DNA of 64,000 nucleotides from Botryllus schlosseri (Eukaryota). The translations under genes and the position numbers were made by a program. Of this stretch, positions 8,256 to 55,891 are shown piece by piece (the stretch's first letter is position 1; each line of letters opens with the position of its first letter). The notes under the pieces are model-generated. The model saw only the letters and a list, made by a program, of their open reading frames with translations, had not been told where the DNA came from and did no database searches. The stretch spans positions 38,316,001-38,380,000 of the forward strand of contig CM119371.1 in NCBI GenBank assembly GCA_051294905.1, read 5' to 3'.

Positions 8256-11200
8256 TTAGGGAGGACAGTACTCGCAAACGTAGAAGGCCGTCGATAAACT
8301 CATTGGGAACTGAATGGTACTGTAGCTGCTACCGATCGCAGTGGCACCCGCGGAGTCATCTCCATCCCCGATCAGAGTCGTGTCGCTGTCTGTGACGTAA
8401 TCGGAATGGACAGAGTTAGCAAAGTCGAAAAACTCGATCCATTGAAGCACGATATCGTTGGGGTCGCTGTCGTTGTCGCGAAGAGGCAACCAAACGGTGC
8501 CCGTCAATCCCAAGTGGTCCCGAAAAAGCGCTCTAAAATTGGAAAGGAATGGTTAATGTCATAGTGTCATGACTAAGGCTGGGTACAATGACTCGAGTAC
8601 GCGGATCTGAATCGAGTATTATTTCTTTTGATTACCGTCGATTAGTAAGATACAATTCCTTCGAGTAACGAAATTATGCGCTCGCTGCCAATAATGGTTG
8701 TATCAGATCGAGCTTTGCGACGATGGCGTTTGTTTGCTTCAACAAACTTGAAACGCTGGAAACGCCAGCGAATATAATTGACAGTTTTAATTAATTCAGC
8801 TTCGACGCCAGAAGTGATAGTAGATCCAAGGCAAAGATAGAAGAGAGAATCAGTCATCCATGTCCAATGTCCATATATAAACGTGTATATTGTGTACAAA
8901 ATCTATGTCGATTTAGTATTTATCCTTGTGAAATAATGGTCGATCTGTTTGCCTCCCTTGCCTTGAACTCAACTTATACTGCCACATTCCGTGTACCACT
9001 AGGTATTTTTTTAACCAAGTCACAATGATGTGGCTGTTGGTATATTATATTGGTATGTGCTATAGCCTATAGGCCTATGCCCTGATCCGTGGACATATGA
9101 GGCAATATATAGATATCTCATGAAATCAAATATCCTCACATGCAGCATGATATGTAATATCTTCACGTATGATTTATATAACAACCAGAGGTGGTCAGTA
9201 ACGAAGTACTTCTACTTTTTCGAAGTACTCAAGTAGTTTGCCTCTACTTCTGGTACTTACTCAAGTAGATCGAATTTTCCCTAATTCTACTTCTACTTAG
9301 TAATATTTTGTGATCTACTTACTTACTTTTCGCTATTTTCAGTTTGTCAAGTAGAAGTAGTATAATCATCCTATCCGAAAGAGAGATTGAGGAATTTCGA
9401 TGCTGTTTTCATGGAGTACTAACATACAATTTTCATAAAAGTTAAGTAAAGCCTAGAAATTCCATCGCGCTTCGCGCAAAGTAGATATGGAGGGACAAGT
9501 ATGTTTTCACGAAAACATTGGTGAAGAGGCTACAATTTACGCAGCGGTAGCGTGGCTCGCTTTACTCCCAGCGTATTGTCGTCCATATGAAATAGTTCAT
9601 CACAGTAAATATGCCCATCACAACGCTTAAAACTAGTAATTTCACAATCTAGCATTTACAACAATCATATCGTAATCCAGCAGCCCAGCATGGCGTGTCC
9701 TAATCTGGCCTCTCTGACTTTTTGACCGTCAGTCCTGTTTTAGCAGACCGCTGTTGAAGCTACCTGGACAAGAGACATGTAACACATTTTCCGCTTTTCA
9801 GAAGTAGTGCTTGTATTTCTCTTTTAATTCACAGTAGCATTAGTTTGAGTTCTAATTAGTTTCAGTTCCTTTGTCGGGATCTGCATGGGGAACTAACATG
9901 TGGAAGTTTAAAAGCTATAGGCCTAGCGTAATAATGCCTTCAATTTTTGGAAAATATAATTTCACTGTAGTATGGCATTTTTACGATCCGCCATATTTTT
10001 AGTACCGTATACTAATCTCGCAAATTCTTAACACCGTATCCGATACAACTTCTTCGTATTGCTCTTCGACTAAACTATGGACCTTATAATATGGGTGAGG
10101 GCGCCGCACCATGACGTTTTCTAAAACGGGGTGTTCGGGTAAACAAAGATTGGGATCCACAGCGATTTCCATAGCGATATTAGGATTTGCATCCTATGTT
10201 GCAGACGAATGCTTATGCTCCCGAAAATTGATACCTCATGTGATGCATTCATATGAATCAAGCTCTCTGAACCCTCCGTATAGCTCAATTTGCAACTTTT
10301 GACAGTACATGAGAACGTATTATGACCGTTTTCAAAACTACTTACTTACTTGAGTAGATTTTATGCCAGGAAATTCTACTTCTACTTCAAGTAGTTTTTG
10401 GTTGCCCTTGAAAAAAGTACTTCTACTTGTACTTGAGTAGATTTTTGCGTCGCTACTTCTACTTCTACTTGAGTAGCCTTCTTGACTACTTTGACCACCT
10501 CTGATAACAACATGTAATCATATCACAAGATATTTAGGACTCGGGGTACACAGCACTGCATATCCAGGCGACATGACGGATTACCAACCTCGGTCTTCTT
10601 GAAATGGCGTTGGATTCCAATATGGCAGCTTGATGTACAGGACAATGCCGAAGAAGCAAACAAAATTACTATCGGGTAGCAGATAGCGGAGAAGCCTTAG
10701 CAGATTTTCAATCTTTGTGTGCCTATTACGTATTAGATCTTCTGATGAATATTGATGCTACACACAACGCAGTTTAGTACCATGATTCTTACTTTCTACA
10801 ATCGCTGCTGCTATCCGGTGCGATGAAATCAATGCTCTAGCTAGGCGTATTCGCTTGACTCTCGGTGATGTCAATAAATCATTGTGAAACTCTTAGTCAC
10901 ATGCGCGTACCAAGGTCATTCATACGCAATAATGCCTCAATCCCATGAAGCGGGCGCTCGCAACGTCGGCGAATTTGGCAAAACGACGCGTGATACCACC
11001 TCAAGAATATATTTATCAACGTAAATTATAGTTTTGATAGTGCTTTCCGCAATAGAAGCCTTAACATGTCGATTGCTCGTATCGCATTTCGCAACTTATG
11101 AAACATGTTGTGCAAAGCTACGCACGTTAGTGAAATCAGATATCTGTTAAGTCGTGTTGATCCCACAACATTGCCAGAATAGCGCAATGAAATAGGCGTG

Positions 11201-14200
11201 GTTGCAAAGATAACAAATTAGCTTTAATGTGACGTGGAGCTAGCATTATATTCTTTGCGGTCGCAAAAAGGTACATATTTGTAATGACGTCATACTGAGT
11301 GAAACCCGTAGCCTATTATCATATTCCAGGTGTCGCCAACCTTTTTGAAACCAATAGCTACTTCATACTGAATAATGCGACGGACTACCATTTACGCCGG
11401 CCGTTTATCAGTTTTCAGTTGAATTTCTTCACTTTGACCAGGGGTTATCGAACTTTTGTAGACACGTCCCCCTTCATGATTGTGAAAAATGTCTCGCTCC
11501 TTATCGTCATGTCGCAAAATGCAGATGTTTTCACGCCCCTGAGGAATTAGACACCAAAATCGTTAAAATATCTATGCGCTACGTGCTACCATTTCACATG
11601 GCTATGTTTAACAAAATATTCAACTGGTATTCTTTTCGCTCTCCGCGCGATTAACCCCCAGCTGTATAGACCAAATCCCATATTCGAGACGTGTCCCAAC
11701 AGCCATAACACCTTCCATGCCACAAAACAATGCGTTGGGCTTTCAAAAAATTATGGTTGTTACTGTCTTCAATATATTTTGATACGACGATAAGGAGAGG
11801 TCATATTTTTCACTATCATCAAGGGGTGCGCGTCCAAAAAAGTTTGAGAACCACCGCTTTACTCAGAATCGAATCACTCTGTTACTCGATTTCGCCAAAG
11901 CCTATTCGCGACAGCAGTCGTGCCATAAGTGGAAGCAAATTGCATTACTCACTGACGATCGAGTGTTGTCCTGACGTTCTTATGGGCAAGGACGGCGCCT
12001 TTATCCTGGCAATCTTCCATGGCCTCGAGGAAAAAGTTTGGAGTCATCGCGGTTTGATAGCGACATCCTTTGTATTCCTTCCAATCCTGGAAATCGTCCT
12101 GGACCATCGGAAAGTTTTGTGAGATTATGGACGTAACTTTCCAAGTCACGAGACCCGGGTCTGCACCGATACTCTTGCCAAGTCCTGATATTTCTCCCTA
12201 ACTAGCTCGGTAATGACTTATGAGTGTAAAAATGAATTTATCTGATGTAAGTTGCATTAGGTATTGGTTGCGGAAAGTGGGGCACCCTTGTACTCGGTCT
12301 CATTGAAGTAGTAGGGGAGATGTGGTACCGATGGATCAAAATTTGGAGATAATCTTTGGCCCCCAAGTCTTCAGCCCATATCAGCAGATCGTATGCTGTC
12401 ACAGCACTTTGATACAAGCTCTACCTATAGGACATAAATATATATGAACATTCGCCTTTTCAAAAAACATTTATGAACGTGCAAAATTTGTTGCTCGAAC
12501 GTATCATCGGTCCGCACCCGGTGGGTCCAAAGGCTCACGACCCGGGGACTAATGTAACATACGCTCAAACACTCAACTGCTTTAACGTTGTTGCTGTGTA
12601 ATGTAATCTAAGCTACAGCAAGCCAAAGAAGAACGTGTAGTCACAATCGTCAAAAATTAGAATAACTATTAATAACTCAGATGTCGCTATAACATCACCC
12701 TGGAACTTACAAATTACAGGGTACATTCATATTGCCCGTAAATCGACATTTTGACTTCCAAATAGCTCGTTATAGCGATAAAACATCACAGGCAATTGTT
12801 ACATAAAGAATATCTGTATGTAGTTATGTTTCAGTTGTTGCATGTTTAGTTAGTGCAACTATTTTGGTTCATTTGGCAATATTATATCATCGGCCCCCAA
12901 CCTAGGCTATAAATTGTATAAATGAATCGGAAAAAGTCCACTCATTGATTGTATTGGTAAAAAAGAACATATGCATTATATAGACTGATGCAATCTCTAT
13001 ACTTTACATTAAAACTGATTGCTGATTTGTCCATGTTGAAGGTTACAAAGAAAAATGTATGCGTCGATCTAAATTTATTCTACACCCCCCAAACATAAAA
13101 CATTTGTCACAGACCCCATAACTCGCGCACGTCGAAGATTTGTGTATGTGAGGAAAGATTCTGCCAGCATAATTGTAGACAAATTAACAGATTGTAATGA
13201 TGGTATAATCACGAAGAATTTTTCAAGTATTTTCGGTCCCAGTGATCCATCGGTACCACATCTCCCCGACACCCTTGAAAAGTTCTGGTTCGCCCTAGCA
13301 GGTACCCCTACGATACACCCTGTTGAATACCACTGGTTTAGATAACTAATCCACAGAGAACACGGGACTGCGCGGCTCGGCAAACGGAGTCGACTATCAA
13401 TTTATCGTATATTCGTAAACAAATATAGCAATGTTATAGCTTGCGAACAGAGCGAAAAATGAAATGGAACTGCTCTTTCCCGAAAGCTACTGCCGCACCG
13501 ATTCTGGAAATACATATTACTAGCTGCTAAGGGCACTGTAGACATCCTGAAATTGTCCTTAAATGTTGAATATCGGCAATGCTGGGATTGTTCGCACCGA
13601 TTGCTATTTCCAGCTGTATCAAGTGGGCCTACTGTCATGTGTTGCGAATCTATCAGTACCTTATTTATCTATAGGTAACATCCGTAACAGCAGTTATAGC
13701 AGTCATGACATCGAACTTGCCACGTGATTGGACGTGACTGTGCTTCAGCTGTGACGCAATTACTGGACATGGCAGTTGGTCAAAGAATTCATTGTCGGCA
13801 CTCCGGTATAAAAGAAGAGGTAACTACGTATATATCTCGACTCAACTGAAAGTACAAGTGCTTTGAGACACCAATAACTTTTGTTTCTAATAAACGTGAA
13901 GAAGTCAAGTTTTATATATTAGCACTGTTTGCCATTTGCTAAAGAGTATTTAACGGTAACATGCATGTTACTTATGATTCTGTCGGCAGTGTGTGTCCAG
14001 GAGTTCAACGAAAAGTAGAATCATCAAATCAATGATACGATCGCTGCTCGCAGATTCAAATTTTCAGGCTGTTGTCAGAATCGGCTCAACAGACTGTCAT
14101 CGCAAATTTCGATAAAGCAGATATTGATACATAGTGCCAGAATCAGTGACGCAGTAGCTTTCGAGAAATACCAGTTCTAATACATTTTGCGCTGTGTTCG

Positions 14201-17200
14201 CAAGCTATAATATTACCATATTTGTTTACGAAGCTACGTGCTTGCATGTATCCGAGGATAAGTAATCTAAAGTACTACTCTTCAACAGGGTGTATAGTAG
14301 GGGTACCTGTTAGGATGTACCAGAACCTTCCAACGGTGTAACACGTCTATGAGAGGAGGTACAAGGGTGTCCCAGTTACCGCAACCAGTTTACCTAATGC
14401 ATCTTGCATCTAATGATATTTTTTTACTCATTACAGTGCTAGATAGTGCGGAGTATTAGGACTGGGCGAGAGTATTGATGGAGCCTGGGGTTCTTAAACT
14501 ATTTTTATCGCGGACCCCTTCAAGTATTGTGGGTGGTTGCGCACGCCCCCCAAAAAATGAGAATCCGATGTCATGCCTAAAATAAGCTAACTAATAATTT
14601 GGCAAGGTAGTCACTATACACGTGAGGGTTAAATATTATAATGTACTTGTTTGTCATCACATTCTCGCACTTGCTAGTCATGAACAATACTCGTGCACTT
14701 GTACAGTTTTTGTGTAAACCTTAACAATATCTAACATCCCGGATACGATTGAGGAACACTTATTGATAAACCCACTCGAATACTGCGGGGATACGGCCTC
14801 TTACCGGAATTACAGTAGTTGTCATTGTCGATTCCGCTGTTGTCGTGGTTGTTCTTACGAGAATGTCACGTATTACTGTATAAGAAGATAACCAGTTGGT
14901 AATGGTCGACACCAAGGATTTAGGAAAATAATCAGACAACCCGAATCAGGGAAACCCGAGTAAATTAACATATTAATTCGCATGATTCGAGTCTAGTAAT
15001 GAGCGTTGGGTTTGTCGAGTATACTGAAATTAGACGCTCTTTGTCTGGAAGATTTCATTTATGAACGAGAAGTATAGGCTCGATACCCTTTACCAGTCTC
15101 GATGGCTGTAAACCTATATTGTTTTTATCGTACCATACGAAACATGTAGTACAAAGATATGCACGTTAACGGAATTGACATATCGTGATTAACTCGCAGC
15201 ACTGTCGCGAAGTGTCATGAAATAGATATGGTCGCAAAATACTAAATAATCTAAGAAATGCATACCTCGCGTTAATTCCTTGTGGTGGCATAACAGGCAT
15301 ACATTTGAATTTTACAAATCTTGCATACTGTCATGTCGTCATGATTAGTGATACACGAACACTCGAAGCGTGACACTCGATTTAGAAACGAATCCCTCAA
15401 TTACCAGATTATGCCCATAACTATATAGTCGCCACCGATGGCTTCCCCACATCAATTACTGCGTTTCGATACACCCGGTTTGACGATACTCACATTTGAT
15501 CATTTCTACCCTCAGCAAGAGTTGGATAATGTCCTGAAACTGATTGTTAGGAGGGGAAACATGTCCGGCTGACGCAGGCTGTCTCCCATCAACGACCCCC
15601 GGTATGCCGTACTGAATGATAAGAAACTAGTTAATGCCGTACAGTTTTATTCGCGCAAATAGTAGGTGAGGTATGCACACTAATTAACTTTAAAAGTATT
15701 ATGTGACCAATGGTGATTACAGATCGTAGACCACCAGTCCTTCGTAGGTGATGAACGAAACAAGAGTTTTACAATACTACCACTACTTCTAATAAGCATG
15801 TGTGACTGGATGCTGGATGTAACAAAGCCATCAAAGCGCAGCCAATCAATACGGCCTCATTCCAGGGAATAGTCGCAATGAACTAACTCGACGCCAAATA
15901 CCAACGTGAAACTTGGCATGTTTATTTATTTTTTATTTATTGGAAAAAGAAACAGAGTGGCGCCTATCACCGTTAGGTCTTGTGCGCCACGACATGAAAC
16001 TTGGCATGTATATTTCCGGTGAACTCCGTACTAGTCTAATGTTTCACATCGGGTTACTAATTAGCCTACTATACGCACCGAAAACGAGAGCGTTTAACTG
16101 TTTATGTTCATGTTATGAATAGTTACTGTTATCGGATACGGTCAGATTTTTTCAGATTCAAGCATGAATTTCGTCATTAACATTAGTATTTTCACATATT
16201 GCTATCAAATATTTATCCTTTCTCAGCCCATGTCATCAGATTCACCGGAAGAGTTTATGGAGGAAGTGTTTCAAAAATGTACGGCAGGTGATAAATAATG
16301 ATGCATATTCGGTTTGGCGAATTGTTATTAGTTACTTTGTTGCATGCTGATATTTCTTGACGTCCCATCGAGATTGTCGGTATATTGAAAAAATACTGGA
16401 GACGCCCGAACAAATTTCTTTCGTGAGTAGCACACGATTACAAGTTGGTATTTCTATATAGGGTCCATCATTTTCCTCTGCTGTTCGCATCTGTACTGTG
16501 GGGATAAGATTGCAAAGCACGCTACTACAGTAAAATCGAAATATGAAGTCGCAATGAATCGTGCATAGCACGAAGAAAATTTCAAGATTATTTAACATCT
16601 CTCAAAAATTCGGGATCAATTCGTAAATTCAATTTGCATGTCAACGGCCACCAACACATACTAACTGAATTACATGTCCACGGTCACACAAATTTCCTTC
16701 TACGGCCACAGGTTGGCTAACCCTGTTATAGTGTAACAAAAATACTAACGTATGTTAAAAATAACAGCACTATGGAAAGTATTTCGAAATTAAGTGAATA
16801 TGAATAGTGTAGGGGATGTGGTCAGTTGGAATATTTCATATACAATTTAGCGGTAGCTTTATTGCAGAGGGTCAAAGCATGGTATATTACTAGCAAGAAT
16901 GTAAATTACGAAGCTCAGACGGTAAGGTATTTCATATACTGACGCCGATGTACGAGACTGAATTTCGCACAAGACTTGTCGAGTCGTGTTGCAAACGTAA
17001 GTACAAGATGAAGGGGATATCTTGTTTCATGTTTGCCAGTATCCGAAGGTATGTGGGCCAAAGCATCAAAATATAGCACGGCGTACTTACAGTTCCCTGC
17101 TGGGTACGTGGTTCTTCCCCAGCTTCCTCGCCGATAACTACAATGCGAACGAGTTTAGAAAGACAAAGTCAGACAAAAAGTCGCCAGAGCCGCTTACCTC

Positions 17201-17249
17201 CGACATAAGCCACCGCCACAAGGAGGATGAAGCTTGGCACGAATCGCAT
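8256..17249 (-). CDS. Secreted C-type lectin-like domain protein, paralog 1 (6 exons, 236 aa)
   Basis: Exons on the minus strand: 17249-17198 (signal peptide MRFVPSFILLVAVAYVG), 17137-17091, 15611-15494, 14875-14805 (Thr-rich), 12098-11953 (DDFQDWKEYKGCRYQ...DCQDKGAVLA), 8532-8256 (VWLPL...LQW...FYVCEYCPP*). All introns are GT-AG, phases 1,0,1,0,2; total 711 nt with no internal stop. CTLD assignment comes from the W..Y.GC.Y / C...GA.LA / WxxL / FxCE pattern. Confidence 0.88.
9186..10503 (-). mobile_element. hAT MITE family A in intron 5 of paralog 1
   Basis: TIRs CAGAGGTGGTCA / TGACCACCTCTG; perfect 8-bp TSD ATAACAAC (9178-9185, 10504-10511); empty homologous site in paralog 2 intron 5 (about 32600). 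Confidence 0.9.
11327..11856. mobile_element. Degenerate hAT-like MITE in intron 5 of paralog 1
   Basis: CAGGTGTCGCCAACC ... GTTTGAGAACCACCG ends; absent from the homologous paralog 2 intron position (about 33415). No TSD. Confidence 0.45.
12155..14490. mobile_element. Long-TIR (about 250 bp) foldback element in intron 4 of paralog 1
   Basis: 12155-12313 plus 13268-13365 is the imperfect reverse complement of about 14245-14490 (e.g. CCTAGCAGGTACCCCTACGATACACCCTGTTGAA vs TTCAACAGGGTGTATAGTAGGGGTACCTGTTAGG). The left arm is split by a younger MITE. Confidence 0.7.
12314..13267. mobile_element. MITE with 25-bp perfect TIR GGGGAGATGTGGTACCGATGGATCA
   Basis: Perfect inverted repeat at 12314-12338 and 13243-13267; it interrupts the left arm of the foldback element. 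TSD unclear. Confidence 0.75.
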
Positions 17250-17419
17250 GATGGCTTACTTTGACTATAGAACACCCGATCTGATTTAGGAAGAGAAGCA
17301 ACTGCCATTATTATTGATCTTGAAAATAAAATAAAATTTGGTGCTTATCGGTTTTGCGCGATGCGGCTAAAACTTGGCATTAAATTCAATTGCAGACAAA
17401 TAGGTTAAATTTTCACATT

Positions 17420-17842
17420 TAGGTTTGCATTAAAAACAAACAGCGTTTTAAAACATTTTGTTCAAAACATGTTTTAAACAGTGTTTTAAACGAAGGCCTC
17501 TAAAAAAATCGTTTTTTTCAAGTTGTAAAATTATGTCATAATTGTGTAAATACTTTCCAAAAAACATGTTGCATGAGCCCACGGACAACTATCACCCGAT
17601 TTAGCGTATATTGACATGGGATGGTTGGAAACCTCAAAATAGTCGGTTCAGCAGTTATAGAACAGATATTACGTCAAATGAGCTATATTTACCATGTATT
17701 TTCAATTGTCAATGTCAATCGATTATGACGTCACAAGTGAATATTCGTGACGTCATGGCTTGAAAAAATAACTTGTTTTAAATGAGGGCCTTGTTTTAAA
17801 GATGTTTGTTTTTAATTGATTTTTGTTTTAAATGCAACCCTA
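17420..17842. mobile_element. MITE (TAGGGTTGCATT TIR family) upstream of paralog 1
   Basis: TAGGTTTGCATT ... AATGCAACCCTA ends; homologous throughout to 57736-58234; carries two TGACGTCA palindromes. Confidence 0.75.
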
Positions 17843-21292: not shown

Positions 21293-22179
21293 GGCGCTTC
21301 TTCGATATACGCCCCAGATCGAAACAGTGCTCCCCATGACACCAACAAATGTTTCACATGAACACAATAAAATTTATAAACGTCAAAATAAATTGTTTTT
21401 TGTCTTTGTTGTGGAAGGGGGATATTATGGTTGGAGGAGAGGGGGATATTAGGACTGGGGAGGGTGGATTTTAGGGTTGAGTAGAGGGGGATATTAGAGT
21501 TGGAGAGGGGGGATATTAGGGTTCGAGGAATGATGGATATTAGGGTTGGGAAAGGGGGATATTAGGGTTGGAGGAGAGGGGGATATTAGGGTTAGGGTTA
21601 GAGCTGGGTTAGGGTTAGAGCTGTGTTAGGGTTAGGAAATGGGGATATTAGGGTTGGAGGAGAGGGGGATATTAGGGTTGGGGAGGGGGGATATTAGGTT
21701 TAAGGGATGGGTTTAGAGTTAGGGTTAGAGCTGTGTTAGGGTTAGGAAATAGGGATATTAGGGTTGGGGAGGGGGGATATTAGGGTTAGGGGATGGGTTT
21801 AGAGTTATGGTTAGAGCTGGGTTGGGGCTAGAGCTGTGTTAGGGTAAGGGTAACCCAAGAATAGGTTTGGAGTGCAGGACACGATATTCCACACTCTCCC
21901 GACCAAAATATCCCCAACCCTAATCTTGGGATACCCTAACACCAACTTTGACCCTAACCCACCTACAACCCTAATAACCCCCTTCCCCCGGAATACCCTA
22001 ATATCCACCTACCCCCAACCCTGATATGCCTAACCCACATCCAACCCTAATATCCGTCTCTCCACAGGCAAAAAACAATTTATTTTGACGTTTATAAAAT
22101 TTGATCGTGTTCATGGGAAACACTTGCTGGTTACATGTGAAGCACTGTTTCGATCTGGGGCGTATATCGAAGAAGCGCC
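21293..22179. mobile_element. MITE with about 130-bp TIRs and internal telomere-like (TTAGGG) repeats
   Basis: First 39 bp of the TIRs are perfect (GGCGCTTCTTCGATATACGCCCCAGATCGAAACAGTGCT); 8-bp direct repeat GACTCGTC on both sides; absent from the paralogous site near 43535. Confidence 0.88.
21420..22050. repeat. G-rich minisatellite (GGGGATATTAGGGTTGGA-type) with TTAGGG runs and an inverted C-rich counterpart
   Basis: Repeated ~21-nt units and TTAGGGTTAGGGTTAGAG at about 21420-21850; AACCCT / CCCTAAT repeats at about 21900-22050. Confidence 0.85.
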
Positions 22180-32700: not shown

Positions 32701-35700
32701 GGGGCATTCCATTATGGTAGCATGCCGTCCAGAACAATGCCGAAGAAGAGAACAAAATTACTGTTTGGTAGTAGATAGCGGAGAAGCCTTAGCAGATTTT
32801 CAATATTTGTGTGCCTATCACATAGCCTAATATATCTTTCGATATATATTGATGCTCTTACACACAACACAGTTTAGTATAACATGTTTCTCACTTTCTA
32901 TAATCTTTGCTGCTATCCGGTACAATTAAATCAGTGCTCTAGCTAGGCCAGTTCGCCTGAGTCTCGGTGATGTCAATGAATCCTTCCGAAACTCTCTGGC
33001 ACATGTGCTTACCAAGGTCATGCTTACGCAACAATGCCCCAATCCCATGGAGCCGGCGCTCGCAACGTTGGAAAAGCTGGCAAAGCTACTTGTGATAATT
33101 CCTTAAGAATCAATTTATCACCGAATATTACAGTACCCACTCTATTTCCTTTTGCAGAAACCTTGAAATTGACCGTATCGCAGCACACGAAACATGTGGT
33201 ACAAATCCACCCAAATTAGTAAAATGAGATAGCCTATCTGGGAAGTCGTGTCGAACCAACATCATTGCCACAATTGTGCAACGAAATAGGCGTTGTCCAC
33301 ACGATAGCAGATAAGCCTTAATGTAATGTAGAACAGGCATTATATACTTTGCGGTCTCAAAAAAGGTACACATTTGAACTTTTCACATATTTCATAATGT
33401 ACTGACGTCATAATGAGAATCGAATTACTCAGCTACTCGATTTCGGCAAGCCCTAGTCGCGACAGTCTTGACTCAAGTTAAAGCAAACTGCATAACTCAC
33501 ATACGATCGGCCGTGGTCCTGACGTTCTTATGGGCGAGGACGGCGCCTTTATCTTGGCAATCTGCAAAAGCCTCGCGCAAAATATTTGGAGTCATCGCTC
33601 TTTGATAGCGACATCCTTTGTATTCCTTCCAAGCCTGGAAATCGTCCTGGGACATCGGAAAGTTTTGTGAGATTCTGGACACAAATATCGAGGTCGTGAT
33701 GGCATGAGTAAAGGTTGCCCGACATTTGAGCTTGCGCGATAACAATATCCCCAACCCTCGTATAAATATCTCTACTCTAAATCGAACCCTAACTCATCCC
33801 CAGCCCAACATTTAATCTCTTTGCGCAACATCCACAAATGCCTAAATGTCGCATGCTAAAGTCGGGCATTTTATTATGTACCCCCCCCCCCTGAAATGCC
33901 CAGCCCACAGACCACGCGGCAAATCGATCGCCCCTATCGACAAGAATCGCGTCTTCAACCATCTATTCCACATACCGGAATCTGCGAGCCCGCTGTTGTA
34001 TCCGACGCCATCGTAACGGTGGTCGTCGCTGGCGAAAGCAGACCTGCGTGAAAATCTTGTCGTAAGCTGGCGGGAGTGATGTATAAGTCGATTCGTTAAT
34101 TCGCGACATCCTGGACGAAAAAGCCGTCAGATCTGTCTCGGGGTTGTAACCAAGCCAAAAGGTTCCAAGTCCCAAGTCAACTTGACTTTTTTAGTTTTAG
34201 CCAAAGAAGTCACCGTCACCATTCAAGTAGAAGTGGAAATGGCGGCTTAAAAGTAACTAAATATAGTAAGCCCATTTTTGCCTAAAAACTGAAATCTGCC
34301 AAGTAGAAATCGAAGCAGCCTGAAATCAGAACTACTCGAGAAAGTAGTGCGAGTAGGCAAAATCTTATTCAAGTGCTTAGAAAAGTAGAAGTACTTCGTT
34401 ACTGACCACATCTGGTTTTAGTTCGAGTAAAGTCGAGTCAATTTCTTTTCAACACCGAGTCAAGTCCAAGTCTTACACATGGAGCAACGGGTCGAGTCCG
34501 AGTGATATTGTTTACTGTTCAAAGTCGAGCTCATGTTATGTTCAACTCCATTCTGTGAAACCATAGTGTCCTATATCGTGTGAGCACCAGCAAATCTCAC
34601 GGATCAGTGAAATTGGTTTACGTCACACTTTCCATTTGTTCAAAGGCAATTTGACGGCTTGCCGAGCATTAAATATGATAAAACGGGTATCAGTCGAAAG
34701 CTACCGCCGTACCTATTGCAAAAATATACATTTTATTCTGCTCGTTGTCCCGGAACCCCCCTCCCCCCAAAAAAGCGCCGAATGTTGCGCTGTAACGGAG
34801 TTTGATATTGTGACGCAGCCATGCCGTCTGAGCAGCTCAGGAGCAAGCGCGCATAAGAGTGAGAGTGTGAATGGTCAATCGGTTGCGCAACAACTGCCAA
34901 TACGCTTGCGGTATGCGCTGCTGCCCACCTGCTCCAAGACGGCATTGTTGCGTCACAATACCAAACTCCGCTACAATGCTACATTCTAGGCTGATTTTGG
35001 GGGGGTTCAGGACCACGAGCAGAATAAAATTTATATTTTCGCAATCAGTACCGGTAGATTTCGATTGATACCCGTTTTATCGAATTTAATGCTCGGAAAG
35101 CCGGTCAAATATTACCGTCAAATTGCCTTTCACCAAATAGAAAGTGTGACGTAGACCAATTTCACTGAGCCATGAGATTTGCGTGTGTCCACCAGAGGTG
35201 GTCAAAGTAGTCAAGAAAGCTACTCAACTAGAAGTAGAATTAGCGACGAACAAATCTACTCAAGTACGAGTAGAAGTACTTCTTCCATAAACAACCTAAA
35301 ACTACTTGAAGTAGAAGTATAATTGACTGACTTTCAATCTACTCAAGTAAGTAAGTAGTTGTGAAAACGATCGTAATTCGCTCGCATCGATTGTCAAAAG
35401 CTGCAAATTGAGCTATGCGAAAGGGGCCGAGCTTGATTCATATTGATGCATACCAGGAGGTATCAAATTTTTGACAGCATAAGCATACGTCCACATCAGG
35501 GGATGAAAATGATAGTATGAATATGGAAATGCGATACTAATCCTCTGTTTACTCGAACCGTCCGTTTCGAAAAATATCATGGTATGTCCACTGGCGTAGC
35601 AGCATGTGCTTCCGCCCCGGCCTCTCGCTTAAAATGCCGTCCCTCTAAGTAGACCACAGCAAATTTCGACATAGATTCATATTCAAACAATCTTGTCAAT

Positions 35701-37730
35701 AAAAATAATTACAAATAATATGCCGCGTCTCAGCCTCAACGGTAATAAGGCCAAAAATAATACAGACAAGAAATAGCGAACGAATGTATCGTGCAAATAG
35801 AAAATCAACAGCCGCCTCAAAACTTAACTTTTCGGTCTTTCGCCGAAGCAAAATCAGCGATAATATCCTCAAATGCAAGTTTCTGAACATAGTCTCTTTC
35901 TATAGACAGAATGAATGGAGCTGATAGCCGATCATCATTCATGGTAGAATGTAAATTTAGCTCACGGGACGCCAGCTATAGGACTACCAATTACGCTGTT
36001 TTAGCCGGCTCTGTACAGTTTGCAGCCTCATTTTGCCGCCCCCTTGGAGCCTGCCGCCACTGGCGCAGAGCCAGAACCGTCAAGTGGCTGCTACGCCACT
36101 GGGTATGTCGCCTTCCCCCATATTATAAGGCCCGTGGTTTAGTCGAAGAGCAATATGGAGAAGTTGTATCGGATACGTTGTAAACACTCTGCGCGATTAA
36201 TAAACTTTAATTATTAATATGGTGGATCGCAAAATGCTTTAATATGTAGCTTTATTTCCGGAAATTAAAGGCATTACTACATTCGCTTTTATACTTCAAC
36301 ATGTATGTTCTCCAGACAAAAGAACTGAAACTGATTAGAACTCAAAGTACGATACTGGGAATTGAAAGAGAAATACAAATACTACTTCTGAAAGTGGAAA
36401 ATGTATTTCATGTCTTTAATCAAGAAAGCTTTAAAGATGGTATGCTAAAACAGGCCCAAAGCTAAAAAAAAGTCAGAGTCCACTTTCCAGATCTGGACAC
36501 GTCATGAGCTGCTAGATTACGACATGAGTAAATGCTAAAGTGCGAAACATCAGTTTCTAACGTTATGATGGGCCATATATATAGTGTGATGAAATATTTC
36601 ATAGGGGCGACAATGCGGTGTGAACGAAACCACACAACACGCTACCTAAATTATATCTACCGATACTTTCGTGAAATCATACTGGTCACTCCGCATTCAC
36701 TGTGCGCAAAGCGCGACGAAAATTCTGGGCTTTACTCAAGTTTTATGAAAATTAAATGATAATACTCCGTGAAATCAGCCCCGAAATCTCTCAGGCTATC
36801 TTCCTGATTGGAGGATTAAACTACTTCTATTTTACAAACTGAAAATAGCGAAAAAGTAAGCAAGTAGATCACACAATATAACGAAGTAGAAGTAGAAGTA
36901 GAAGTAGCGGGGAATTAGATCTATTTGAGTAAGTACCCAAGTTGCGGAAAACTACTTTAGTACTTCAAAAAAGTAGACGTAGTTAGTTACGGACCACCTC
37001 TGGTGTCCACACCATATAGGTCACTATGGTGAAACTCTTTAGTGATATCGAAGGCCGTGGATTCATATTATACTCATTTTTTCCCGTTCTAATCGTGTTT
37101 ATTCATACAGATAGGACAGTGTTTGGGCCTATTTTTCAATTATCAGTCTGATATGCCAGACTTGAATACGTCCCATATAGAATGCGCCCGGTCATGTGAC
37201 TTGATCGAGTCTTGCGCAACGACCCGAATACAAGTCGAGTTACTACACATATTGACATATTGTTAGGAAGATGACTCGAGTCAAGTCGAGGCAACGAAAA
37301 TTTGTAGTAGGACTTTAGTCGAGTCATCACAACCCAGCTTGACCAGTCCTGCTGGAAACAACAGTTTGACGTTCGACTTGGTACTTACGCTCGATAATTT
37401 GTAGCCACACGTACGATTCTATGAGCCGCTTGGTGTCGAACCGTGGTCGAGGAGTGGGTGCTGAGTAATACATCGGTCTGTTGATTACGGGCCCCGTGTG
37501 CTGGATTAACGCGAGGAGTTTTCATCATAAATCAAAATGAAGGGTTTCATACACATACACACACACACAATAACAGACTCACCCATCCGTGTTTACTTAT
37601 CGGCACATCCGAGGTTGCTGCAAGGAAAAGAATTTTCAAAATGATGGCGTCATCGACTGATTGATACGTAACACTCACCTCGAATACAGATCACCGTCAG
37701 AAGAAAAATAAAACCAGCAACGAATCGCAT
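29718..37730 (-). CDS. Secreted C-type lectin-like domain protein, paralog 2 (6 exons, 232 aa)
   Basis: Exons 37730-37679 (MRFVAGFIFLLTVICIR), 37617-37583, 37500-37389, 34043-33976, 33646-33501, 30003-29718. GT-AG introns with the same phases as paralog 1; 699 nt open. Confidence 0.88.
30511..30601. mobile_element. 91-bp hAT mini-MITE in intron 5 of paralog 2
   Basis: CAGAGGCTCTCAAAC ... GTTTGTGAACCACTG flanked by CTCTAGTG / CTCTACAG. Confidence 0.6.
31150..32327. mobile_element. hAT MITE (TAGGGATGGTGTGAA TIRs, GTTCAC subterminal repeats) in intron 5 of paralog 2
   Basis: Perfect TIRs and perfect TSD GTATTTAC (31142-31149, 32328-32335). Confidence 0.9.
32336..32517 (-). mobile_element. Family A MITE terminal fragment
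   Basis: CTACTTCTACTTCTACTTGAAG...CTTGACTACTTTGACCACATTTG matches the end of 9186-10503. Confidence 0.6.
33718..33866. mobile_element. Small foldback/MITE with internal AACCCT motifs in intron 4 of paralog 2
   Basis: GCCCGACATTTGAGCTTGCG vs CGCATGCTAAAGTCGGGC inverted ends; interior contains CCCCAACCCT and GAACCCTAAC. Confidence 0.45.
34202..34414 (+). mobile_element. Short family A-related hAT MITE in intron 3 of paralog 2
   Basis: Ends GTAGAAGTACTTCGTTACTGACCACATCTG; flanked by GTTTTAGC / GTTTTAGT. Confidence 0.6.
35193..37002 (+). mobile_element. hAT MITE family A in intron 3 of paralog 2 (contains a nested element)
   Basis: CAGAGGTGGTC ... GACCACCTCTG, perfect TSD GTGTCCAC (35185-35192, 37003-37010). 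Confidence 0.9.
35589..36101. mobile_element. Nested 513-bp hAT deletion derivative (family B)
   Basis: CACTGGCGTAGCAGC ... GCTGCTACGCCACTG, perfect TSD GGTATGTC; both ends homologous to 40272-42169; empty site in family A copy at about 590-600. Confidence 0.88.
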
Positions 37731-41683: not shown

Positions 41684-41822
41684 AGCCTATTAATTGGTGT
41701 TTTGGGAATCAGCGCGACACTAACTTTCGATTGAGACCTGTTTGATTAAATTTTAGTTCACCAGCCAGCTACAGGACTACCAATTACGCTTCTTTTAGCC
41801 GCCGTGTGTACGGACACTGTGC

Positions 41823-46394: not shown

Positions 46395-46695
46395 TGCTGC
46401 TAAGTGGACGTGTTAAAATTAGCCTGCGTCCCATAGCACCGTGTGGCTTGGCAAATAGCTCTGCTAGCTTCGCTAGGTGGTCCGTATCGGCCGAGCGTAT
46501 GTATTTCAAAGCATGGCCAACCTCATTATTACCGACTGAAATCATATTACTTAAACACGGACGCCTGCTTGGTGCTCATCACCAACTAAAGAGATCAGTT
46601 CACGGCCAACTTCAGTAAACAAATATGTAGTGCTCCGAATCTTGTTGAAATATAGGCCCGTATATAAACGCATCTTTCATTGTTGAACATAACAT
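46395..46695 (-). pseudogene. Decayed SPIN/GTF2IRD2-like hAT transposase fragment (unit 3 copy)
   Basis: Collinear with 3828-4103; HALKYIRSADTDHLAKLAEL retained, frameshifted. Confidence 0.55.
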
Positions 46696-50510: not shown

Positions 50511-52958
50511 GCTGAAAGTATGATTAAATTCAACCACGAAAGGTAATTAGGCCCCGAGCAATCAAACATACTAGATAGTTTGTGCATCAGTTCATTATTA
50601 CATTGAAGATCGTCAGTTACTGGAGACATGAAACTACCCTGTGTCACTTTTACTATCTGGTTCGGTAAGGCGTAGCATTGCTTGAATACACCGGAAATTA
50701 GAAGTCTTGCTCAAAACTTTTATTTTCAATGCAGAAATTATTGGTCCACTGAAGTCACTCGAGAATTATTTGTGATGCTCCCGTGCACAACTATTGGTAT
50801 GCGTACCACAGTTTGGGAACTACTGCTTTAAAGCTTCTTAATTGACTCCCGACAGGACGAGACACAAATACAAACGTAAATAAAAAGGATAAAATTGAAT
50901 GTAGTAATAAATATGAGTTAAAATGGTTTATTATTATGATATCCTTTGTCAAAATAGCAGCTAAGCTTGTTATCGCAAAAGGGAAACAATTGAACCTGAT
51001 TTAAATATATAAAATATATAACAGCCGGACTAAGTCTAATCTGGAATACACCAAATTTACTGCAATACGCAACTTTGATTGATCAAACACACTCTAGTTT
51101 CACGCTGAATCACAACGGTACGACGCTCTGCGCCAATGGCGTAGGTAATGACAATAGGACCACGATTTACGCATTAAATTATGGTCATGACATTACACAA
51201 TTTATAACCCAGTATTGCCGTCCTGAGCAAGTTCCAATTTCATGCACCAAAAATACCAGGAAGTGGGCTAACTACGCGAATGAGATTTTCATTATTGATT
51301 TTCATCTCGCCTTCCGACACATCCACCTTTTCTTGTCACCAGTCCTTTTATAGTACCTTCTTCTACCTTTCATGCAGTGTGCGTGCCTTCTTTTTGACAT
51401 CGCCTAGGCCAGGTGGGTGTCTGATTTTGAAGACTACTCCAAGTCGTTTCGACACCTTCCTATCTTTCATTGTATCACAGTCTTGTGGTGTATTGAAATG
51501 ATGAAATTTTTAGGAGCAAGTTGAATTGAATTGAATTGCTTCGTTCTTAGTGGTTAGCATCCCCTAGTGGATGTTTATAAATGTTCATCTTCGGTTATGC
51601 TTTAAAGGGCCATTCCGCTCTAAATATGTTGTGGTTTCAAATTTTAGATGGCCAAAAGAGCAGCCATTTGTCTTGGAAAGCCACCGCATTCGAACTGCAC
51701 TTGAACGAACTGCACTCAAATCCACTGCTACAGGGATATGGCAATAGCTTGGAAATAATTTTATTAGGATATTTCACATTGTAGCTCACGCTGTAGCTAC
51801 CCCCAGCAATACTGATAGCCCGGATTCTTGCGTCATAATAGCTACGACATAAAAGCTAGTCGGACAAAACACGAGAGTTATTGATCCTCACGATGAGACA
51901 GATCATTTTCGATCTGAATGAATTCCTCGTTTCTCTCGCCTGTGGCGCAGGATCCCGAACAAAGGATCAGATTTATTTCAGATCAGATTTTTAAGTTTGG
52001 AGCACTGCTGCAATAAAGTCACTACCTACCAGTCCCAAGTCGAAGTACGAGGCCTGACTCATTTCATGGTATTATGCAAGATGACTGAAGTAGGCCTATA
52101 TATTGAATCCCTGTTTAATCCGAATCGAGTCGAATTGGTATATTGTTATGCAAAGGTGCGTTTTGACACTCAAACATATGTCGAATTGCTAATCTAGGTA
52201 GGTAAACTCCATCGTATTTCTCTATAATTCAGCCAGATAGCTGGTAAGACACGAAACACGGGAACGTTAGAAAAATTGATATGATGTAATAGCCCAGCTA
52301 CACATCCGTAAAATAGAATTTACTCCTGCACCAATTGTGAACGAAAAATATATATGCATAAACTATATCATTCCGATTCGAATCACACAAGACCTTCATT
52401 AAGGGAGTATTGCGCAGTCAGAATAACAGAAAGACGTTGATATATATAGATTGCTATCAGTCTGTTAAAACGAAAGCTCTAATCATTCATCTGCGGTTGA
52501 TTTATAGTGACATAGCAATGGAGGCTCAGTAAAATCAGCCTGCACAATATCCTTGTTTGACTGGTTGCGCTCAGAGGTCACACAATCATTCCGATTACAC
52601 TCTAAAGTTTCAACGATTCAGTAGACACCGATTGCTGTCTATTATTGAAATTGATTCGAGAATTTTTCTTCTACTTACAAGTCAGTCCGCATTTCTGAAA
52701 CACCGATTCAGAGTTAAAGCCATGTCAATTTTGCATGTCAGGTCAAATCATGTGAAATAATTCTCTTGAGTGATCCCGAGACTGGTTTCAAGATGCCAAC
52801 TTGGGCGCGGTAAATGAATTCAGGAAGTTCAGGAATAATCTTGATAACAATTAAGCGCAAGCAACATGCAAGCAACAAACAACTACCAATATGACACATT
52901 AGTTGTCAGTGTCCAAATATAGGGTGAGCAATCATTCCTACGCGGTCCTCATGTAAGT

Positions 52959-55891
52959 TTAGGAAGGACAGTACTCGCACGCGTAAAAGGCCGTCCCAAC
53001 AGCATCTCCGAATTGGATCGAACTGTAAGTGCTACCGAACGTAGTGGCGGTTACGGCATTATCCCCGTCCCCGATCAGAGTCGTTCCGCTGTCTTCTTCG
53101 TAAGGTGACGTGACGAATTCTGACCCAGTGGAATCCTCGACCCATTCAAGTTCAACAACCGAAGCACCATCCACGTTGGTGTCAAACAAAGGCAACCAAA
53201 CTGTCCCTGACAATCCCAAGTGGTCCCGCAAGAGCGCTCTGAAATTGAAACCGATTTGAAATAACATACCGGAGGCAAATCATCGGTGGTATCTAATGAT
53301 CATGACTAGGAATGAACAGAATCGACCACCTGACCACCCCTATTCCGAATCACGTGTTAGGCTTCGAGTCGTGTAGAATACCGAGTCACACTTATTGTGA
53401 CGTCATGGCAGTACGAATTATGTGGAAGATATGTCCACCTTGACCGCAACGAATACAATCTCACTTCAACATCGCATTAAAGACAATTTGATCCATCCCG
53501 ACCAGATCTATTTCTATGCACATTGCGACAATGTCGTGGGTTGGTTACGACATGACAGAAAACAAATTGTTATTAACGAGGGTCACAGGTTGGTACAAAA
53601 AATATCCTTTTTTCCGGATCCCGGGGACTCACTGATTAAAAGTTATAGGTTGCCTAAAACACGCTGCACGCCAAGTTTCGCTCGATTCAAACCAGTACAC
53701 GCCGACGCAGAGGTAATTGAAATTTTCGAATTTACTGTGAAAAAAATTCAAATTTTACTGTAAATCCCACGAAATTGTTGAGTTGTCTACAAAAACGATG
53801 CGAAACAAAATTGACGCAATCACAACCCGTTTGCGGCTGAAAGTTTTGGATTCGCAAAAATAGTAATTAAGGTGAAAAATCCCCGAATCATGAATGAAAA
53901 ACTCAAAAAATTTGCGCATAATTTATTCGGCATCGTTTTGGTAGAGGGCTCAACAATTTTATGAAGTTGCCAGTAAATTCTGATTTTTTCTTCTCCATTT
54001 TTTTTTTATAATAAATTCAGAATTTTTAATTTATCCTTGCGCCCAGCCCATTTCGTGGTGCATTAGCGTTACGATTCTGTGATTTCATGACGTCACGTAA
54101 AACATGACGCGTTACTTACGCACGATCAGCGGCAGTCCTGACGTTCTTATGAGCAAGGGTAGCGCCTTTATCCTGACAATATGCAAGCGCTGCGGAAAAT
54201 CCACTTGGGACTCCTGGGGCCTGATAGCGACATCCTTTGTATTCCTTCCAATCCTTGAATTCGTCCTGTAACATCACAGCGTTTTGTAAGATTCCGTACG
54301 TAATTTAAGAGGCCCCGATAGTGAAAGTTAGAAATACGATCGCACCTACCCAGTGTTGAGAGCAATTCACTACTAGCGATTCAGAAGCATATTTTGACCT
54401 TGGTCAAGTCACTTAAATATAGAAGGTGATATGACTCAAGTGAAGTCACAGCGATGTAAAGGGCAAAAGCAAAGCAATATAATAATGACTGTAATACAGA
54501 CCGAGTTGCTATATATTTTGAATCAAGTAAGGAGTTGATACTGATTTTGAAAAGAGCGCTGTATCGTTTGCATATGCATATACCTGTTAAATTACATTGG
54601 TAGCTATCCGTCCATAAGTCTGCAGTATATCATTATCAATCAAAATAGAGGATAGCTTACGAAACCTCGAAAGGTAAAAACAAATCGATATGAGGCTATA
54701 GAAAACCAATGTTAACATCCATGAGACAACTAAAGTCGCACCAATTGTTGGCGAGTACTATAATTTAAAAAACCATATTATATATTCGACTTTAATGATA
54801 CAAAACGGTTTCTCAAGTATAATAAGAGCACATACTGCCTCTTTAATGACTTCAACTTTGACACATTTCTGAAAGGCTGAGTTAAGTCAAATGAAATCAA
54901 GTCGTTTTTGCTAAGTGACTCAGATCAAGTCAATTCATGTGATAAAGTTTACTCGGTCCGACAAGAGTCAAAATATATCTGGAGGCCCCTAAGACTCTTT
55001 TTATCGCGTCGTCAAGTATTAATTCTACAAACCGGAAGCGGCGTGGTCGTGTCTGACGCCATCGTAGTCGTCGTAGTCGTCTCTTGCGAACGTAAACCTG
55101 CGAAAAATTATAACTTGTCGCTAGACGACGGAAGTGATTTGAAATAAAATCTATCCGTTTCGTCAATTCACGACTTCCCGTGCCAAGGGTCCACGACATC
55201 TCACTTTATTTTGCCTACCCTCCCTTTTGACGTACGAGATTATTTCGTCTCATATACATAGCTCATCGCTCGGTCACTAGCGACAGTGCTGACCTTATCA
55301 GGTAGATAATCAGGCCGATGTATTAGGCAACAACTATAGACCTATGATTGGACCGTCATAAAAGATGTCTTTTTAAGTCATCATCCCATACATTTAGCCG
55401 TTAGGGGGTTAACTCATCCACCCACAGAACCTTGGGAATATGCGAGGAAAAAGTCCAGGAATCAATGTTCTGGATGAGAACAAATCTTATTTTGTGTCAG
55501 CCTTTCCGGCAATAATCGTCTGAGGTCTTAGTTCATACTTACGATTGATCAGTTGCGCCAACACGATTATTCGCACGAGCCGCTCCGTGTTGATCGTATT
55601 TCGTGGGGCCGGTGTTGCGTAGTACCTCTGATCGTTGGTTTGGACCCCCGTGTACTGGAACAATAATTATTCGACAAATTCATCATAAATCTAAATAAAG
55701 GATTGCTTGCTCTCACACACGCGCACTCGCTATCAGACTCACCGCTTCATGTCTAGTTTCGGGCTCGTCCGATGATGCTGCAATAGAAAAATGCTTTCAG
55801 AATGATGGCGTCATCGATTGATTCGTCCGTAACACTCACCTCGAATACAGATGACAGTCAGAAGAAAAATGAAACTAGCAACGAATCGCAT
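52959..55891 (-). CDS. Secreted C-type lectin-like domain protein, paralog 3 (6 exons, 229 aa)
   Basis: Exons 55891-55840 (MRFVASFIFLLTVICIR), 55777-55743, 55654-55543, 55097-55033 (donor GTTTGT), 54265-54120, 53238-52959. Same phases; 690 nt open. Confidence 0.88.
53722..54022. repeat. Imperfect inverted repeat (about 100-bp arms) in intron 5 of paralog 3
   Basis: AAATTGTTGAGTTGTCTACAAAAACGATGCG (about 53772-53802) is near reverse-complementary to GGCATCGTTTTGGTAGAGGGCTCAACAATTT (about 53929-53959); the arms extend further with gaps. Confidence 0.6.

What the first reader, a model, noticed from the sequence alone, without database searches (positions are those of the whole stretch)
8256..55891. 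Tandem family of secreted, hyper-acidic, non-canonical C-type lectin-like proteins
Seen: three intact six-exon genes with a conserved architecture. The CTLD keeps the outer scaffold (GC.Y, C..KGA.LA, VWLPL, L.W, FY.CE) but has no EPN/QPD, no WND and no inner Cys pair. It has an extra C-terminal Cys (CEYC) that could pair with the N-terminal GC Cys. Exon 6 encodes 14, 12 and 15 Asp/Glu against 2, 1 and 1 Arg and no Lys (hand count). Known: CTLDs lacking the canonical sugar site serve as mineral, ice or protein binders (lithostathine, ovocleidin-17, perlucin, sea-urchin SM30/SM50, type II antifreeze proteins). Inference: an undescribed matrix, biomineral or metal-binding (tunic or spicule) family rather than sugar-binding lectins.
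Basis: partly seen in the sequence, partly recalled or inferred. Interest (0 to 1): 0.78.

Follow-up and report, generated by a model that had tools for sequence, protein, structure and literature searches.

The report
Sea-squirt secreted lectin-like gene trio
Three neighbouring sea-squirt genes, one shown here to be transcribed, encode small secreted proteins whose end domain looks like a heavily remodelled C-type lectin fold with an acidic, lysine-free face. The family is real and undescribed, the fold is only weakly supported, and nothing points to a mineral-forming role.

Summary
Three intact six-exon genes lie on the minus strand (8256-17249, 29718-37730, 52959-55891), encoding 236, 232 and 229 aa. 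All five introns of gene 3 are confirmed by spliced RNA.

"Hyper-acidic" is overstated. Asp+Glu is only 13-16% of exon 6. The real oddity is near-total loss of Lys and Arg there, and it is conserved in all eight known family members.

A profile search of 1.84 billion protein representatives found only five unnamed ORF fragments. All come from one sequencing run of a closely related species, so the family is undescribed and narrowly distributed.

Support for a CTLD fold is weak but consistent. Pfam is silent, and only exon 5 gives sub-threshold, in-register matches to CD69, NKR-P1A, DEC-205 and poxvirus A33. Exon 6 matches nothing. The spliced domain could not be folded because it has no reference.

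Best reading: a lineage-specific secreted, O-glycosylated, probably CTLD-derived binding protein without the Ca/sugar site. The biomineral or metal reading has no support. Earlier notes of this scan identify the host as Botryllus, which as far as I know makes no spicules.

The parts
17198..17249 (-). gene 1 exon 1 (ATG at 17249; signal peptide)
   Evidence: tblastn with the exon 1 of genes 2 and 3; GT donor. By homology only.
17091..17137 (-). gene 1 exon 2 (47 nt, 12 nt longer than in genes 2 and 3)
   Evidence: AG/GT sites and kept phase. By homology only.
15494..15611 (-). gene 1 exon 3 (118 nt; divergent, ends in a hydrophobic stretch)
   Evidence: The only open AG..GT candidate of the right phase between exons 2 and 4. 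Least certain exon.
14805..14875 (-). gene 1 exon 4 (Thr-rich linker)
   Evidence: tblastn to the exon 4 of gene 3 (E 0.001); splice sites.
11953..12098 (-). gene 1 exon 5 (146 nt; first third of the lectin-like domain: W..Y.GC.Y hairpin and the helix carrying the C..KGA.LA motif)
8256..8532 (-). gene 1 exon 6, coding part with stop (acidic, Lys-free two thirds of the domain; VWLPL, FYVCEYC)
37679..37730 (-). gene 2 exon 1 (ATG at 37730; signal peptide)
   Evidence: 85% identical to gene 3's exon 1 over the 27-aa tblastn match that spans it (94% over the 17 exon-1 residues); splice sites.
37583..37617 (-). gene 2 exon 2 (35 nt)
37389..37500 (-). gene 2 exon 3 (112 nt)
33976..34043 (-). gene 2 exon 4 (Thr-rich linker)
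33501..33646 (-). gene 2 exon 5 (146 nt)
29718..30003 (-). gene 2 exon 6, coding part with stop
55840..55948 (-). gene 3 exon 1 (5' UTR seen up to 55948, ATG at 55891; signal peptide)
   Evidence: RNA contigs of X1 and X2, and the joint 55777|55840.
55743..55777 (-). gene 3 exon 2 (35 nt)
   Evidence: Joints 55654|55743 and 55777|55840 in X1 and X2.
55543..55654 (-). gene 3 exon 3 (112 nt; ends in a hydrophobic stretch)
   Evidence: Joints in X1, placed on GT..AG.
55033..55097 (-). gene 3 exon 4 (65 nt; Thr-rich linker)
   Evidence: Joints in X1 and X15.
54120..54265 (-). gene 3 exon 5 (146 nt)
   Evidence: Joints in X1 and X15, 25 and 11 raw reads.
52400..53238 (-). gene 3 exon 6 (coding 52959-53238 including stop; 3' UTR covered at least down to 52400, the edge of the stretch laid)
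   Evidence: Continuous RNA depth in X1, X2 and X15; ORF.

Best explanation
This is a tandem trio from a small gene family restricted, as far as the databases show, to this sea squirt and one close relative. Each gene encodes a secreted glycoprotein of about 210 residues after signal-peptide removal. The parts in order are a cleavable signal peptide (exon 1), a fast-evolving N-terminal part that ends in a hydrophobic stretch (exons 2-3), a Thr-rich mucin-type linker (exon 4), and a 140-residue four-Cys domain (exons 5-6). The domain is most likely a strongly derived C-type lectin-like domain. It keeps the beta0-beta1 hairpin, helix alpha1 with its Cys, a WIGL-type strand (VWLPL) and the beta5 'F/Y-V-C-E' strand with its Cys. 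It has lost the beta3/loop disulfide and every Ca/sugar motif. It has gained a Cys three residues after the beta5 Cys, which probably staples the C-terminus to the Cys of strand beta1. The part that would form the ligand face (exon 6) is uniformly anionic and essentially free of Lys. The protein would therefore act as a soluble binding module for cations or basic ligands, not as a classical Ca-dependent sugar lectin. Shown: the genes, the splicing and transcription of gene 3, the composition, the conservation and the narrow distribution. Inferred: secretion, O-glycosylation, the fold, the disulfide map and the ligand class.
For: Genes and splicing. The same six-exon plan, with the same exon lengths and phases (52, 35.., 146 nt), appears in a diverged paralogue of the related species, L001. 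L004 shows the Thr-rich exon 4 and an exon 5 of the same 146 nt. Purifying selection acts on exons 5-6 (dN/dS 0.3-0.75), while exon 3 evolves at about 0.7-1.5. All four Cys are kept wherever the sequence is available, and exon 6 has net charge -9 to -15 with 1 Lys in 706 residues across eight members. Zero Lys in the window's 277 exon-6 residues has P about 6e-8 at average usage. CTLD pointers, all sub-threshold but all in the correct register at the domain's N-terminus: Pfam Chordopox_A33R at E 0.06; NKR-P1A at E 0.65; DEC-205 at E 0.36, with six of its ten CTLDs aligned at alpha1, and CD69 at E 0.94. Five of the eight PDB sequences below E 10 were CTLD proteins. AF2 of exon 5 alone gives a hairpin plus helix, and its top Foldseek row is DC-SIGNR at E 9.5. 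In the AF2 model of exon 6 alone, the putative beta5 stretch is the low-confidence part, as expected if its partners lie in exon 5.
Against: No match reaches significance. Pfam finds no Lectin_C in any exon of any member. Exon 6, two thirds of the domain, matches no solved structure by sequence. Its stand-alone model (pLDDT 66) matches no fold (best Foldseek E 1.0; best VIA Z 2.5). The C2-C3 disulfide, one of the most conserved CTLD features, is absent. Single exon-5 sequences of the relative's paralogues hit nothing in the PDB. The full spliced domain was never tested. No ligand, tissue or oligomer data exist. Genes 1 and 2 have no RNA evidence of their own.
Confidence: 0.6

Rival explanations
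1. The exon 5-6 domain is not a CTLD. It is a lineage-specific four-Cys fold of its own, and the CTLD-like motifs are convergent or chance resemblances.
For: No significant hit to any family or structure. The exon-6 model has no structural neighbour. The inner Cys pair, WND and EPN/QPD are all absent. The family has no detectable relatives among annotated proteins.
Against: Independent sub-threshold hits at exon 5 all fall on CTLDs and all in register. The spacings from the alpha1 Cys to the W of the WIGL-type strand (34 residues) and on to the beta5 Cys (about 72 residues) fit a long-loop CTLD. This spacing comparison rests on my knowledge of CTLD anatomy and on no tool. The exon-wise models are partial domains and cannot exclude a CTLD.
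Confidence: 0.25
2. One reading: an acidic matrix, biomineral-nucleating or metal-binding protein of tunic or spicules.
For: Net charge of -11 to -14 on exon 6 and a conserved 'IGDGD'-type acidic loop in four of the eight members. The protein has a secretory signal. A C-x-x-C pair sits at the C-terminus. Non-sugar CTLDs do serve in mineralisation elsewhere (established knowledge: lithostathine, ovocleidin-17, perlucin, SM30/SM50).
Against: Asp+Glu is only 13-16% of exon 6 and 11-15% of the mature proteins, with no poly-Asp/Glu runs or repeats. Earlier notes of this scan give the genome as Botryllus schlosseri (not re-checked). To my knowledge that styelid forms no calcareous spicules. The acidic loop motif is not conserved across the family.
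Confidence: 0.08
3. The N-terminal hydrophobic stretch is an uncleaved signal anchor, so the proteins are type II surface receptors of blood cells. They would be akin to BsCD94-1, the published Botryllus CD94/NKR-P1-like receptor.
For: The best sub-threshold matches are NK-receptor-type CTLDs, NKR-P1A and CD69. BsCD94-1 is described as a type II CTLD receptor with a very short cytoplasmic tail. Gene 1's hydrophobic stretch is 18 residues long.
Against: The hydrophobic stretch in genes 2 and 3 is only about 14 residues, with two residues before it and a small residue (Ala) at the likely -1 position, which is typical of a cleaved signal (my inference, since no signal-peptide predictor was available). 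BsCD94-1 is reported as BLAST-similar to mammalian receptors, and this family is not. No annotated protein was hit by the exon-6 profile. The 2003 paper was not held, so no direct comparison was possible.
Confidence: 0.07

Closest known systems
NK-receptor-type (group V) C-type lectin-like domains: CD69, NKR-P1A/KLRB1
   Same: They give the best sequence matches, in register over the W..Y..C hairpin, the alpha1 helix with its Cys and the following 'GA.LA' strand. Like them, this family lacks Ca/sugar motifs.
   Different: E-values are only 0.65-1.8. Group V domains are type II membrane proteins with three canonical disulfides, C0-C0', C1-C4 and C2-C3 (established knowledge). Here the proteins are probably secreted, C0 and C2-C3 are missing, and a new C-terminal Cys is present.
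Free secreted non-sugar CTLDs: lithostathine/REG, type II antifreeze proteins, perlucin, ovocleidin-17, sea-urchin SM30/SM50
   Same: All are small secreted proteins made mostly of one CTLD, often acidic, and they bind something other than sugar.
   Different: These keep the canonical Cys framework and are recognisable as CTLDs by sequence (established knowledge). This family is invisible to Pfam when scanned exon by exon. No mineral or ice context is known for the host.
Tetranectin and collectins (neck plus CTLD)
   Same: The order is signal peptide, short N-terminal segment, a hydrophobic, possibly helical stretch, then the lectin-like domain.
   Different: The stretch is only about 16 residues and not clearly amphipathic. 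A Thr-rich linker separates it from the domain. No collagen or heptad region is present. Oligomerisation is pure speculation.
Poxvirus A33 (Pfam Chordopox_A33R), a CTLD-like protein without a Ca site
   Same: It is the only Pfam family that points to a CTLD, matching gene 1's exon 5 (E 0.061, 13.1 bits).
   Different: The score is below the 22.5-bit cut-off, and only one of six exon-5 sequences matches.
BsCD94-1 of Botryllus schlosseri (Khalturin et al. 2003, PNAS 100:622)
   Same: It is from the same organism (by the scan's earlier notes) and is a CTLD protein without sugar motifs, compared in the literature to CD94/NKR-P1.
   Different: It is described as a type II membrane receptor clearly similar to mammalian receptors. 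The exon-6 profile hit no named protein. No direct comparison was possible because the paper is not held.

Membership tests
C-type lectin-like domain (CTLD) superfamily | Cys in helix alpha1 and Cys in strand beta5 (the C1-C4 disulfide) | tested here: met
   The Cys of 'C.DKG' and the Cys of 'F/Y-V-C-E' are invariant in all sequences that cover them. That they form the disulfide itself was not testable.
C-type lectin-like domain (CTLD) superfamily | Inner disulfide C2-C3 (beta3 to the loop after beta4) | tested here: not met
   No Cys lies between the alpha1 Cys and the beta5 Cys in any member.
C-type lectin-like domain (CTLD) superfamily | WIGL-type motif in strand beta2 | tested here: met
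   The variant 'VWLPL' is present in the three window genes, 34 residues after the alpha1 Cys. Trp is kept in 6 of the 7 members that cover the motif, and Leu in all.
C-type lectin-like domain (CTLD) superfamily | Significant match to a CTLD profile (Pfam Lectin_C or relatives) or to solved CTLDs | tested here: not met
   Tested exon by exon only. There was no Lectin_C hit. The best results were A33R at E 0.06 and, in the PDB, DEC-205, NKR-P1A and CD69 at E 0.36-1.8. The spliced domain as a whole was not tested.
C-type lectin-like domain (CTLD) superfamily | CTLD fold (two helices, two sheets, long loop region) | tested here: inconclusive
   Only partial-domain models could be made. Exon 6 gave pLDDT 66 and no fold neighbour. 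Exon 5 gave pLDDT 52, a hairpin plus helix as in beta0-beta1-alpha1, with DC-SIGNR as top row at E 9.5.
C-type lectins in the strict sense (Ca-dependent sugar binders) | EPN or QPD triplet together with the WND motif at Ca site 2 | tested here: not met
   No EPN, QPD, EPS, EPD, WND or WSD occurs in any of the three proteins.
Acidic biomineral matrix proteins | Strong excess of Asp/Glu (typically a quarter or more of residues, often in runs) and a mineralising tissue context | tested here: not met
   Asp+Glu is 13-16% of exon 6 and 11-15% of the mature proteins, with no runs. Tissue context was not obtainable. The threshold is from general knowledge.

The most novel reading that the evidence does not exclude
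The family would be a new CTLD group, so far seen in only two closely related sea squirts. In it the fold has been re-stapled: the C0-C0' and C2-C3 disulfides are both lost, and a new link joins strand beta1 to a Cys three residues past the beta5 Cys. The whole ligand face has been turned into a Lys-free polyanion, which gives a binding mode for cations or basic partners that no described CTLD group uses. Such a module might serve colony-specific biology, such as the blood, tunic or vasculature interface or recognition between colonies. Alternatively the domain is not a CTLD at all but a new small disulfide fold.
Probability: 0.3. Interest if true: 0.6.

Novelty: new variant of a known kind. 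Interest (0 to 1): 0.4.

Why it matters
CTLDs are a classic case of one scaffold reused for many ligands. A natural variant that drops the most conserved inner disulfide, moves a second one and clears Lys from its binding face would show how far the scaffold can be remodelled. It would also give colonial sea squirts, models for allorecognition and regeneration, a new family of secreted recognition or matrix proteins to test. As it stands, this is a well-documented, expressed orphan family of unknown function. That is useful for annotating this genome but is not a surprise in kind, because lineage-specific tandem expansions of odd lectin-like genes are common in invertebrates.

Tried and rejected
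1. Structure prediction, Pfam or HHpred on the spliced protein or domain was not possible. A spliced sequence has no reference, and I did not type it. No full-length or exon 5+6 protein exists in the searched collections.

2. I scanned metagenome contigs for a cDNA-like exon 5/6 junction, hoping to obtain a referenceable spliced copy. There were no hits.

3. AF2 on exon 6 alone and on exon 5 alone gave low-to-middling confidence and no significant fold neighbour. I treat these as uninformative about the fold, not as evidence against a CTLD.

5. Single exon-5 sequences of L001 and L004 against the PDB gave nothing.

6. The BsCD94-1 paper could not be read.

7. A helical-moment test of the exon-3 hydrophobic stretch was indecisive. 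I therefore offer the 'neck' idea only as speculation.

8. I rejected 'hyper-acidic' after counting residues.

9. I rejected the idea of pseudogenes or extra copies in the window. tblastn finds exactly three copies each of exons 5 and 6, all intact.

10. Rfam found no RNA families in the window.


Full report
**What is there**

All lie on the minus strand, and the window contains no N runs. ORF listing, blastn and tblastn among the three regions showed two strongly conserved coding blocks per copy. Further upstream lie a conserved start exon and small upstream exons. The start exons sit at 55891, 37730 and 17249.

**Transcription and splicing**

Twelve small runs from three studies hold 5-18% of the sampled words of the gene 3 region, about what its exons make up. 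I laid four runs on 52400-56200, which gave five joints:

- 53238|54120
- 54264|55032
- 55095|55541
- 55654|55743
- 55777|55840

All five are carried by spliced contigs of X1. Two are also in X2, and two are in raw RNA reads of X15 (25 and 11 reads). After resolving the stated 1-2 base ambiguity, every intron is GT..AG on the minus strand.

The joined exons give a 229-aa ORF. RNA depth continues at least 560 nt past the stop, which is the 3' UTR. X15 gave 344 reads out of 12.9 million records read. X19 gave 5 out of 10 million, so expression differs between samples. X15 differs from the window at eight coding positions, five non-synonymous and three synonymous. That is ordinary allelic variation for a polymorphic animal.

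**Genes 1 and 2**

I modelled these by homology. Both give six exons with identical phases and GT..AG introns, and intact ORFs of 236 and 232 aa.

| Exon | Gene 1 (nt) | Gene 2 (nt) | Gene 3 (nt) |
|---|---|---|---|
| 1 (coding part) | 52 | 52 | 52 |
| 2 | 47 | 35 | 35 |
| 3 | 118 | 112 | 112 |
| 4 | 71 | 68 | 65 |
| 5 | 146 | 146 | 146 |
| 6 (coding, with stop) | 277 | 286 | 280 |

These models have no RNA check of their own, and gene 1's exons 2-4 are the weakest part.

**Composition**

But Asp+Glu is only 13-16% of exon 6 and 11-15% of the mature proteins, near the roughly 12% of an average protein (general knowledge). "Hyper-acidic" is therefore wrong.

The net charge of -11 to -14 comes from the near absence of basic residues. 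Exon 5 of the same domain has 8-10% Lys and is close to neutral. Zero Lys in 277 residues has P about 6e-8 at average usage.

The trait is family-wide. Eight exon-6 sequences carry net -9 to -15 and one Lys in 706 residues. The domain pI is 4.2-4.4.

**Architecture**

- Exon 1 encodes M-R followed by 14-18 hydrophobic residues and then a small residue. I read this as a cleaved signal peptide. This is an inference, as no predictor was available.
- Exons 2-3 are poorly conserved (16-42% identity, dN/dS about 0.7-1.5). They always end in a hydrophobic stretch of about 16 residues.
- Exon 4 is a Thr run, a typical mucin-type O-glycosylation cluster (general knowledge).
- Exons 5-6 encode the 140-residue four-Cys domain, under purifying selection (dN/dS 0.3-0.75).

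Its exons 1-4 resemble gene 3 (94% and 67% identity in exons 1 and 4). Its exons 5-6 resemble gene 1 (82% and 73%). The switch lies in intron 4, between about 33946 and 33680.

**Relatives**

A profile of exon 6 was searched against 1.84 billion cluster representatives. It found five proteins of 77-121 aa. All are unnamed singleton ORF fragments from one Logan-assembled run, SRR25569784. Two word searches added nothing.

These contigs are genomic and carry introns. L003 aligns to gene 1 at 81% over 824 bp, including intron and 3' flank, so the run is from a close relative. L001 holds a complete diverged paralogue with the same six exons, including the 52-, 35- and 146-nt exons and a Thr-rich exon 4. 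L004 holds exons 4-6 with a 56-nt intron 5.

The family therefore has at least five members in that species and probably more than three in this genome. No annotated protein from any organism matched. Coverage of ascidian genomic DNA in that collection is patchy; even this window's own ORFs were absent. So absence from other ascidians is shown only for annotated proteomes.

**Is the domain a CTLD?**

Pfam finds nothing significant in any exon of any member. Every weak pointer at exon 5 is nevertheless a CTLD, and each is in the right register:

| Search | Match | E-value |
|---|---|---|
| Pfam, gene 1 exon 5 | Chordopox_A33R | 0.06 |
| PDB, three-sequence exon-5 profile | NKR-P1A (two of three hits) | 0.65-0.79 |
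| PDB, six-sequence exon-5 profile | DEC-205, six of its CTLDs aligned at helix alpha1 | 0.36 |
| PDB, six-sequence exon-5 profile | CD69, residues 6-40 | 0.94 |
| Foldseek on the exon-5 model | DC-SIGNR (top row) | 9.5 |

Five of the eight PDB sequences below E 10 were CTLD proteins. AF2 of exon 5 alone (pLDDT 52) draws a hairpin followed by a helix, as in beta0-beta1-alpha1.

Exon 6 matches no solved structure by sequence. Its stand-alone model (pLDDT 66) has no structural neighbour: the best Foldseek E is 1.0 and the best VIA Z is 2.5. A partial domain cannot decide the question.

Motif positions and spacings fit a long-loop CTLD. The alpha1 Cys is 34 residues before the Trp of 'VWLPL', and the beta5 Cys follows about 72 residues later. 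That comparison rests on my knowledge of CTLD anatomy. The inner C2-C3 pair, EPN/QPD and WND are absent.

I put the CTLD fold at roughly two in three. The decisive test, folding the spliced domain, could not be run because a spliced sequence has no reference here. My attempts to find a referenceable spliced copy failed.

**Function**

Nothing tested here speaks for mineral, matrix or metal binding. The acidity is unremarkable in Asp+Glu content. The 'IGDGD' loop is kept in only four of the eight members.

Earlier notes of this scan name the genome as Botryllus schlosseri (I did not re-check). To my knowledge that species makes no calcareous spicules. The known Botryllus CTLD receptor BsCD94-1 is described as a type II membrane protein clearly similar to mammalian NK receptors. 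This family is not similar in that way, but the original paper was not held.

The most economical reading is a lineage-specific, secreted, O-glycosylated binding protein built on a remodelled CTLD. Its anionic, Lys-free face would bind cations or basic partners. The ligand and the tissue are unknown.

**Verdict**

The "undescribed non-canonical CTLD-like family" is plausible but unproven at the fold level. The biomineral or metal inference is unsupported. Interest is moderate.

Noticed in passing
window 21408-21831: An interstitial array of degenerate telomere-type repeats (TTAGGG variants; periods 17-132 nt) lies in the spacer between genes 1 and 2.
   Followed up: no
window 56577-56857: A 135-bp unit is repeated 2.1 times at 96% identity, about 630 bp upstream of gene 3's first exon. 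It produces the duplicated 'ORFs' listed at 56568-56957.
   Followed up: no
window 53543-53923 (intron 5 of gene 3): RNA contigs of run X2 alone cover this intronic stretch at up to 66x, with loose ends on one side. X1 has no depth there and X15 next to none. This is probably a transcribed repeat or transposon fragment and not part of the gene.
   Followed up: no
window 9712-10503 versus 35193-36478: Two blocks in gene 1's intron 5 recur in inverted orientation inside gene 2's intron 3 (75-80% identity, about 400 bp each). They are likely copies of one mobile element.
   Followed up: no
window 10523-11281 versus 32612-33376: About 780 bp of intron 5 is 76% identical between genes 1 and 2, and about 900 bp downstream of the stop is 75% identical. 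This fits the shared origin of their 3' halves, the mosaic of gene 2.
   Followed up: partly
L001 1-3215; L004 440-980: In the related species (run SRR25569784) the paralogues are much more compact. Intron 5 is about 106 nt in L001 and 56 nt in L004, against 881-3497 nt here. The introns of this cluster have therefore grown, or those of the relative have shrunk.
   Followed up: partly
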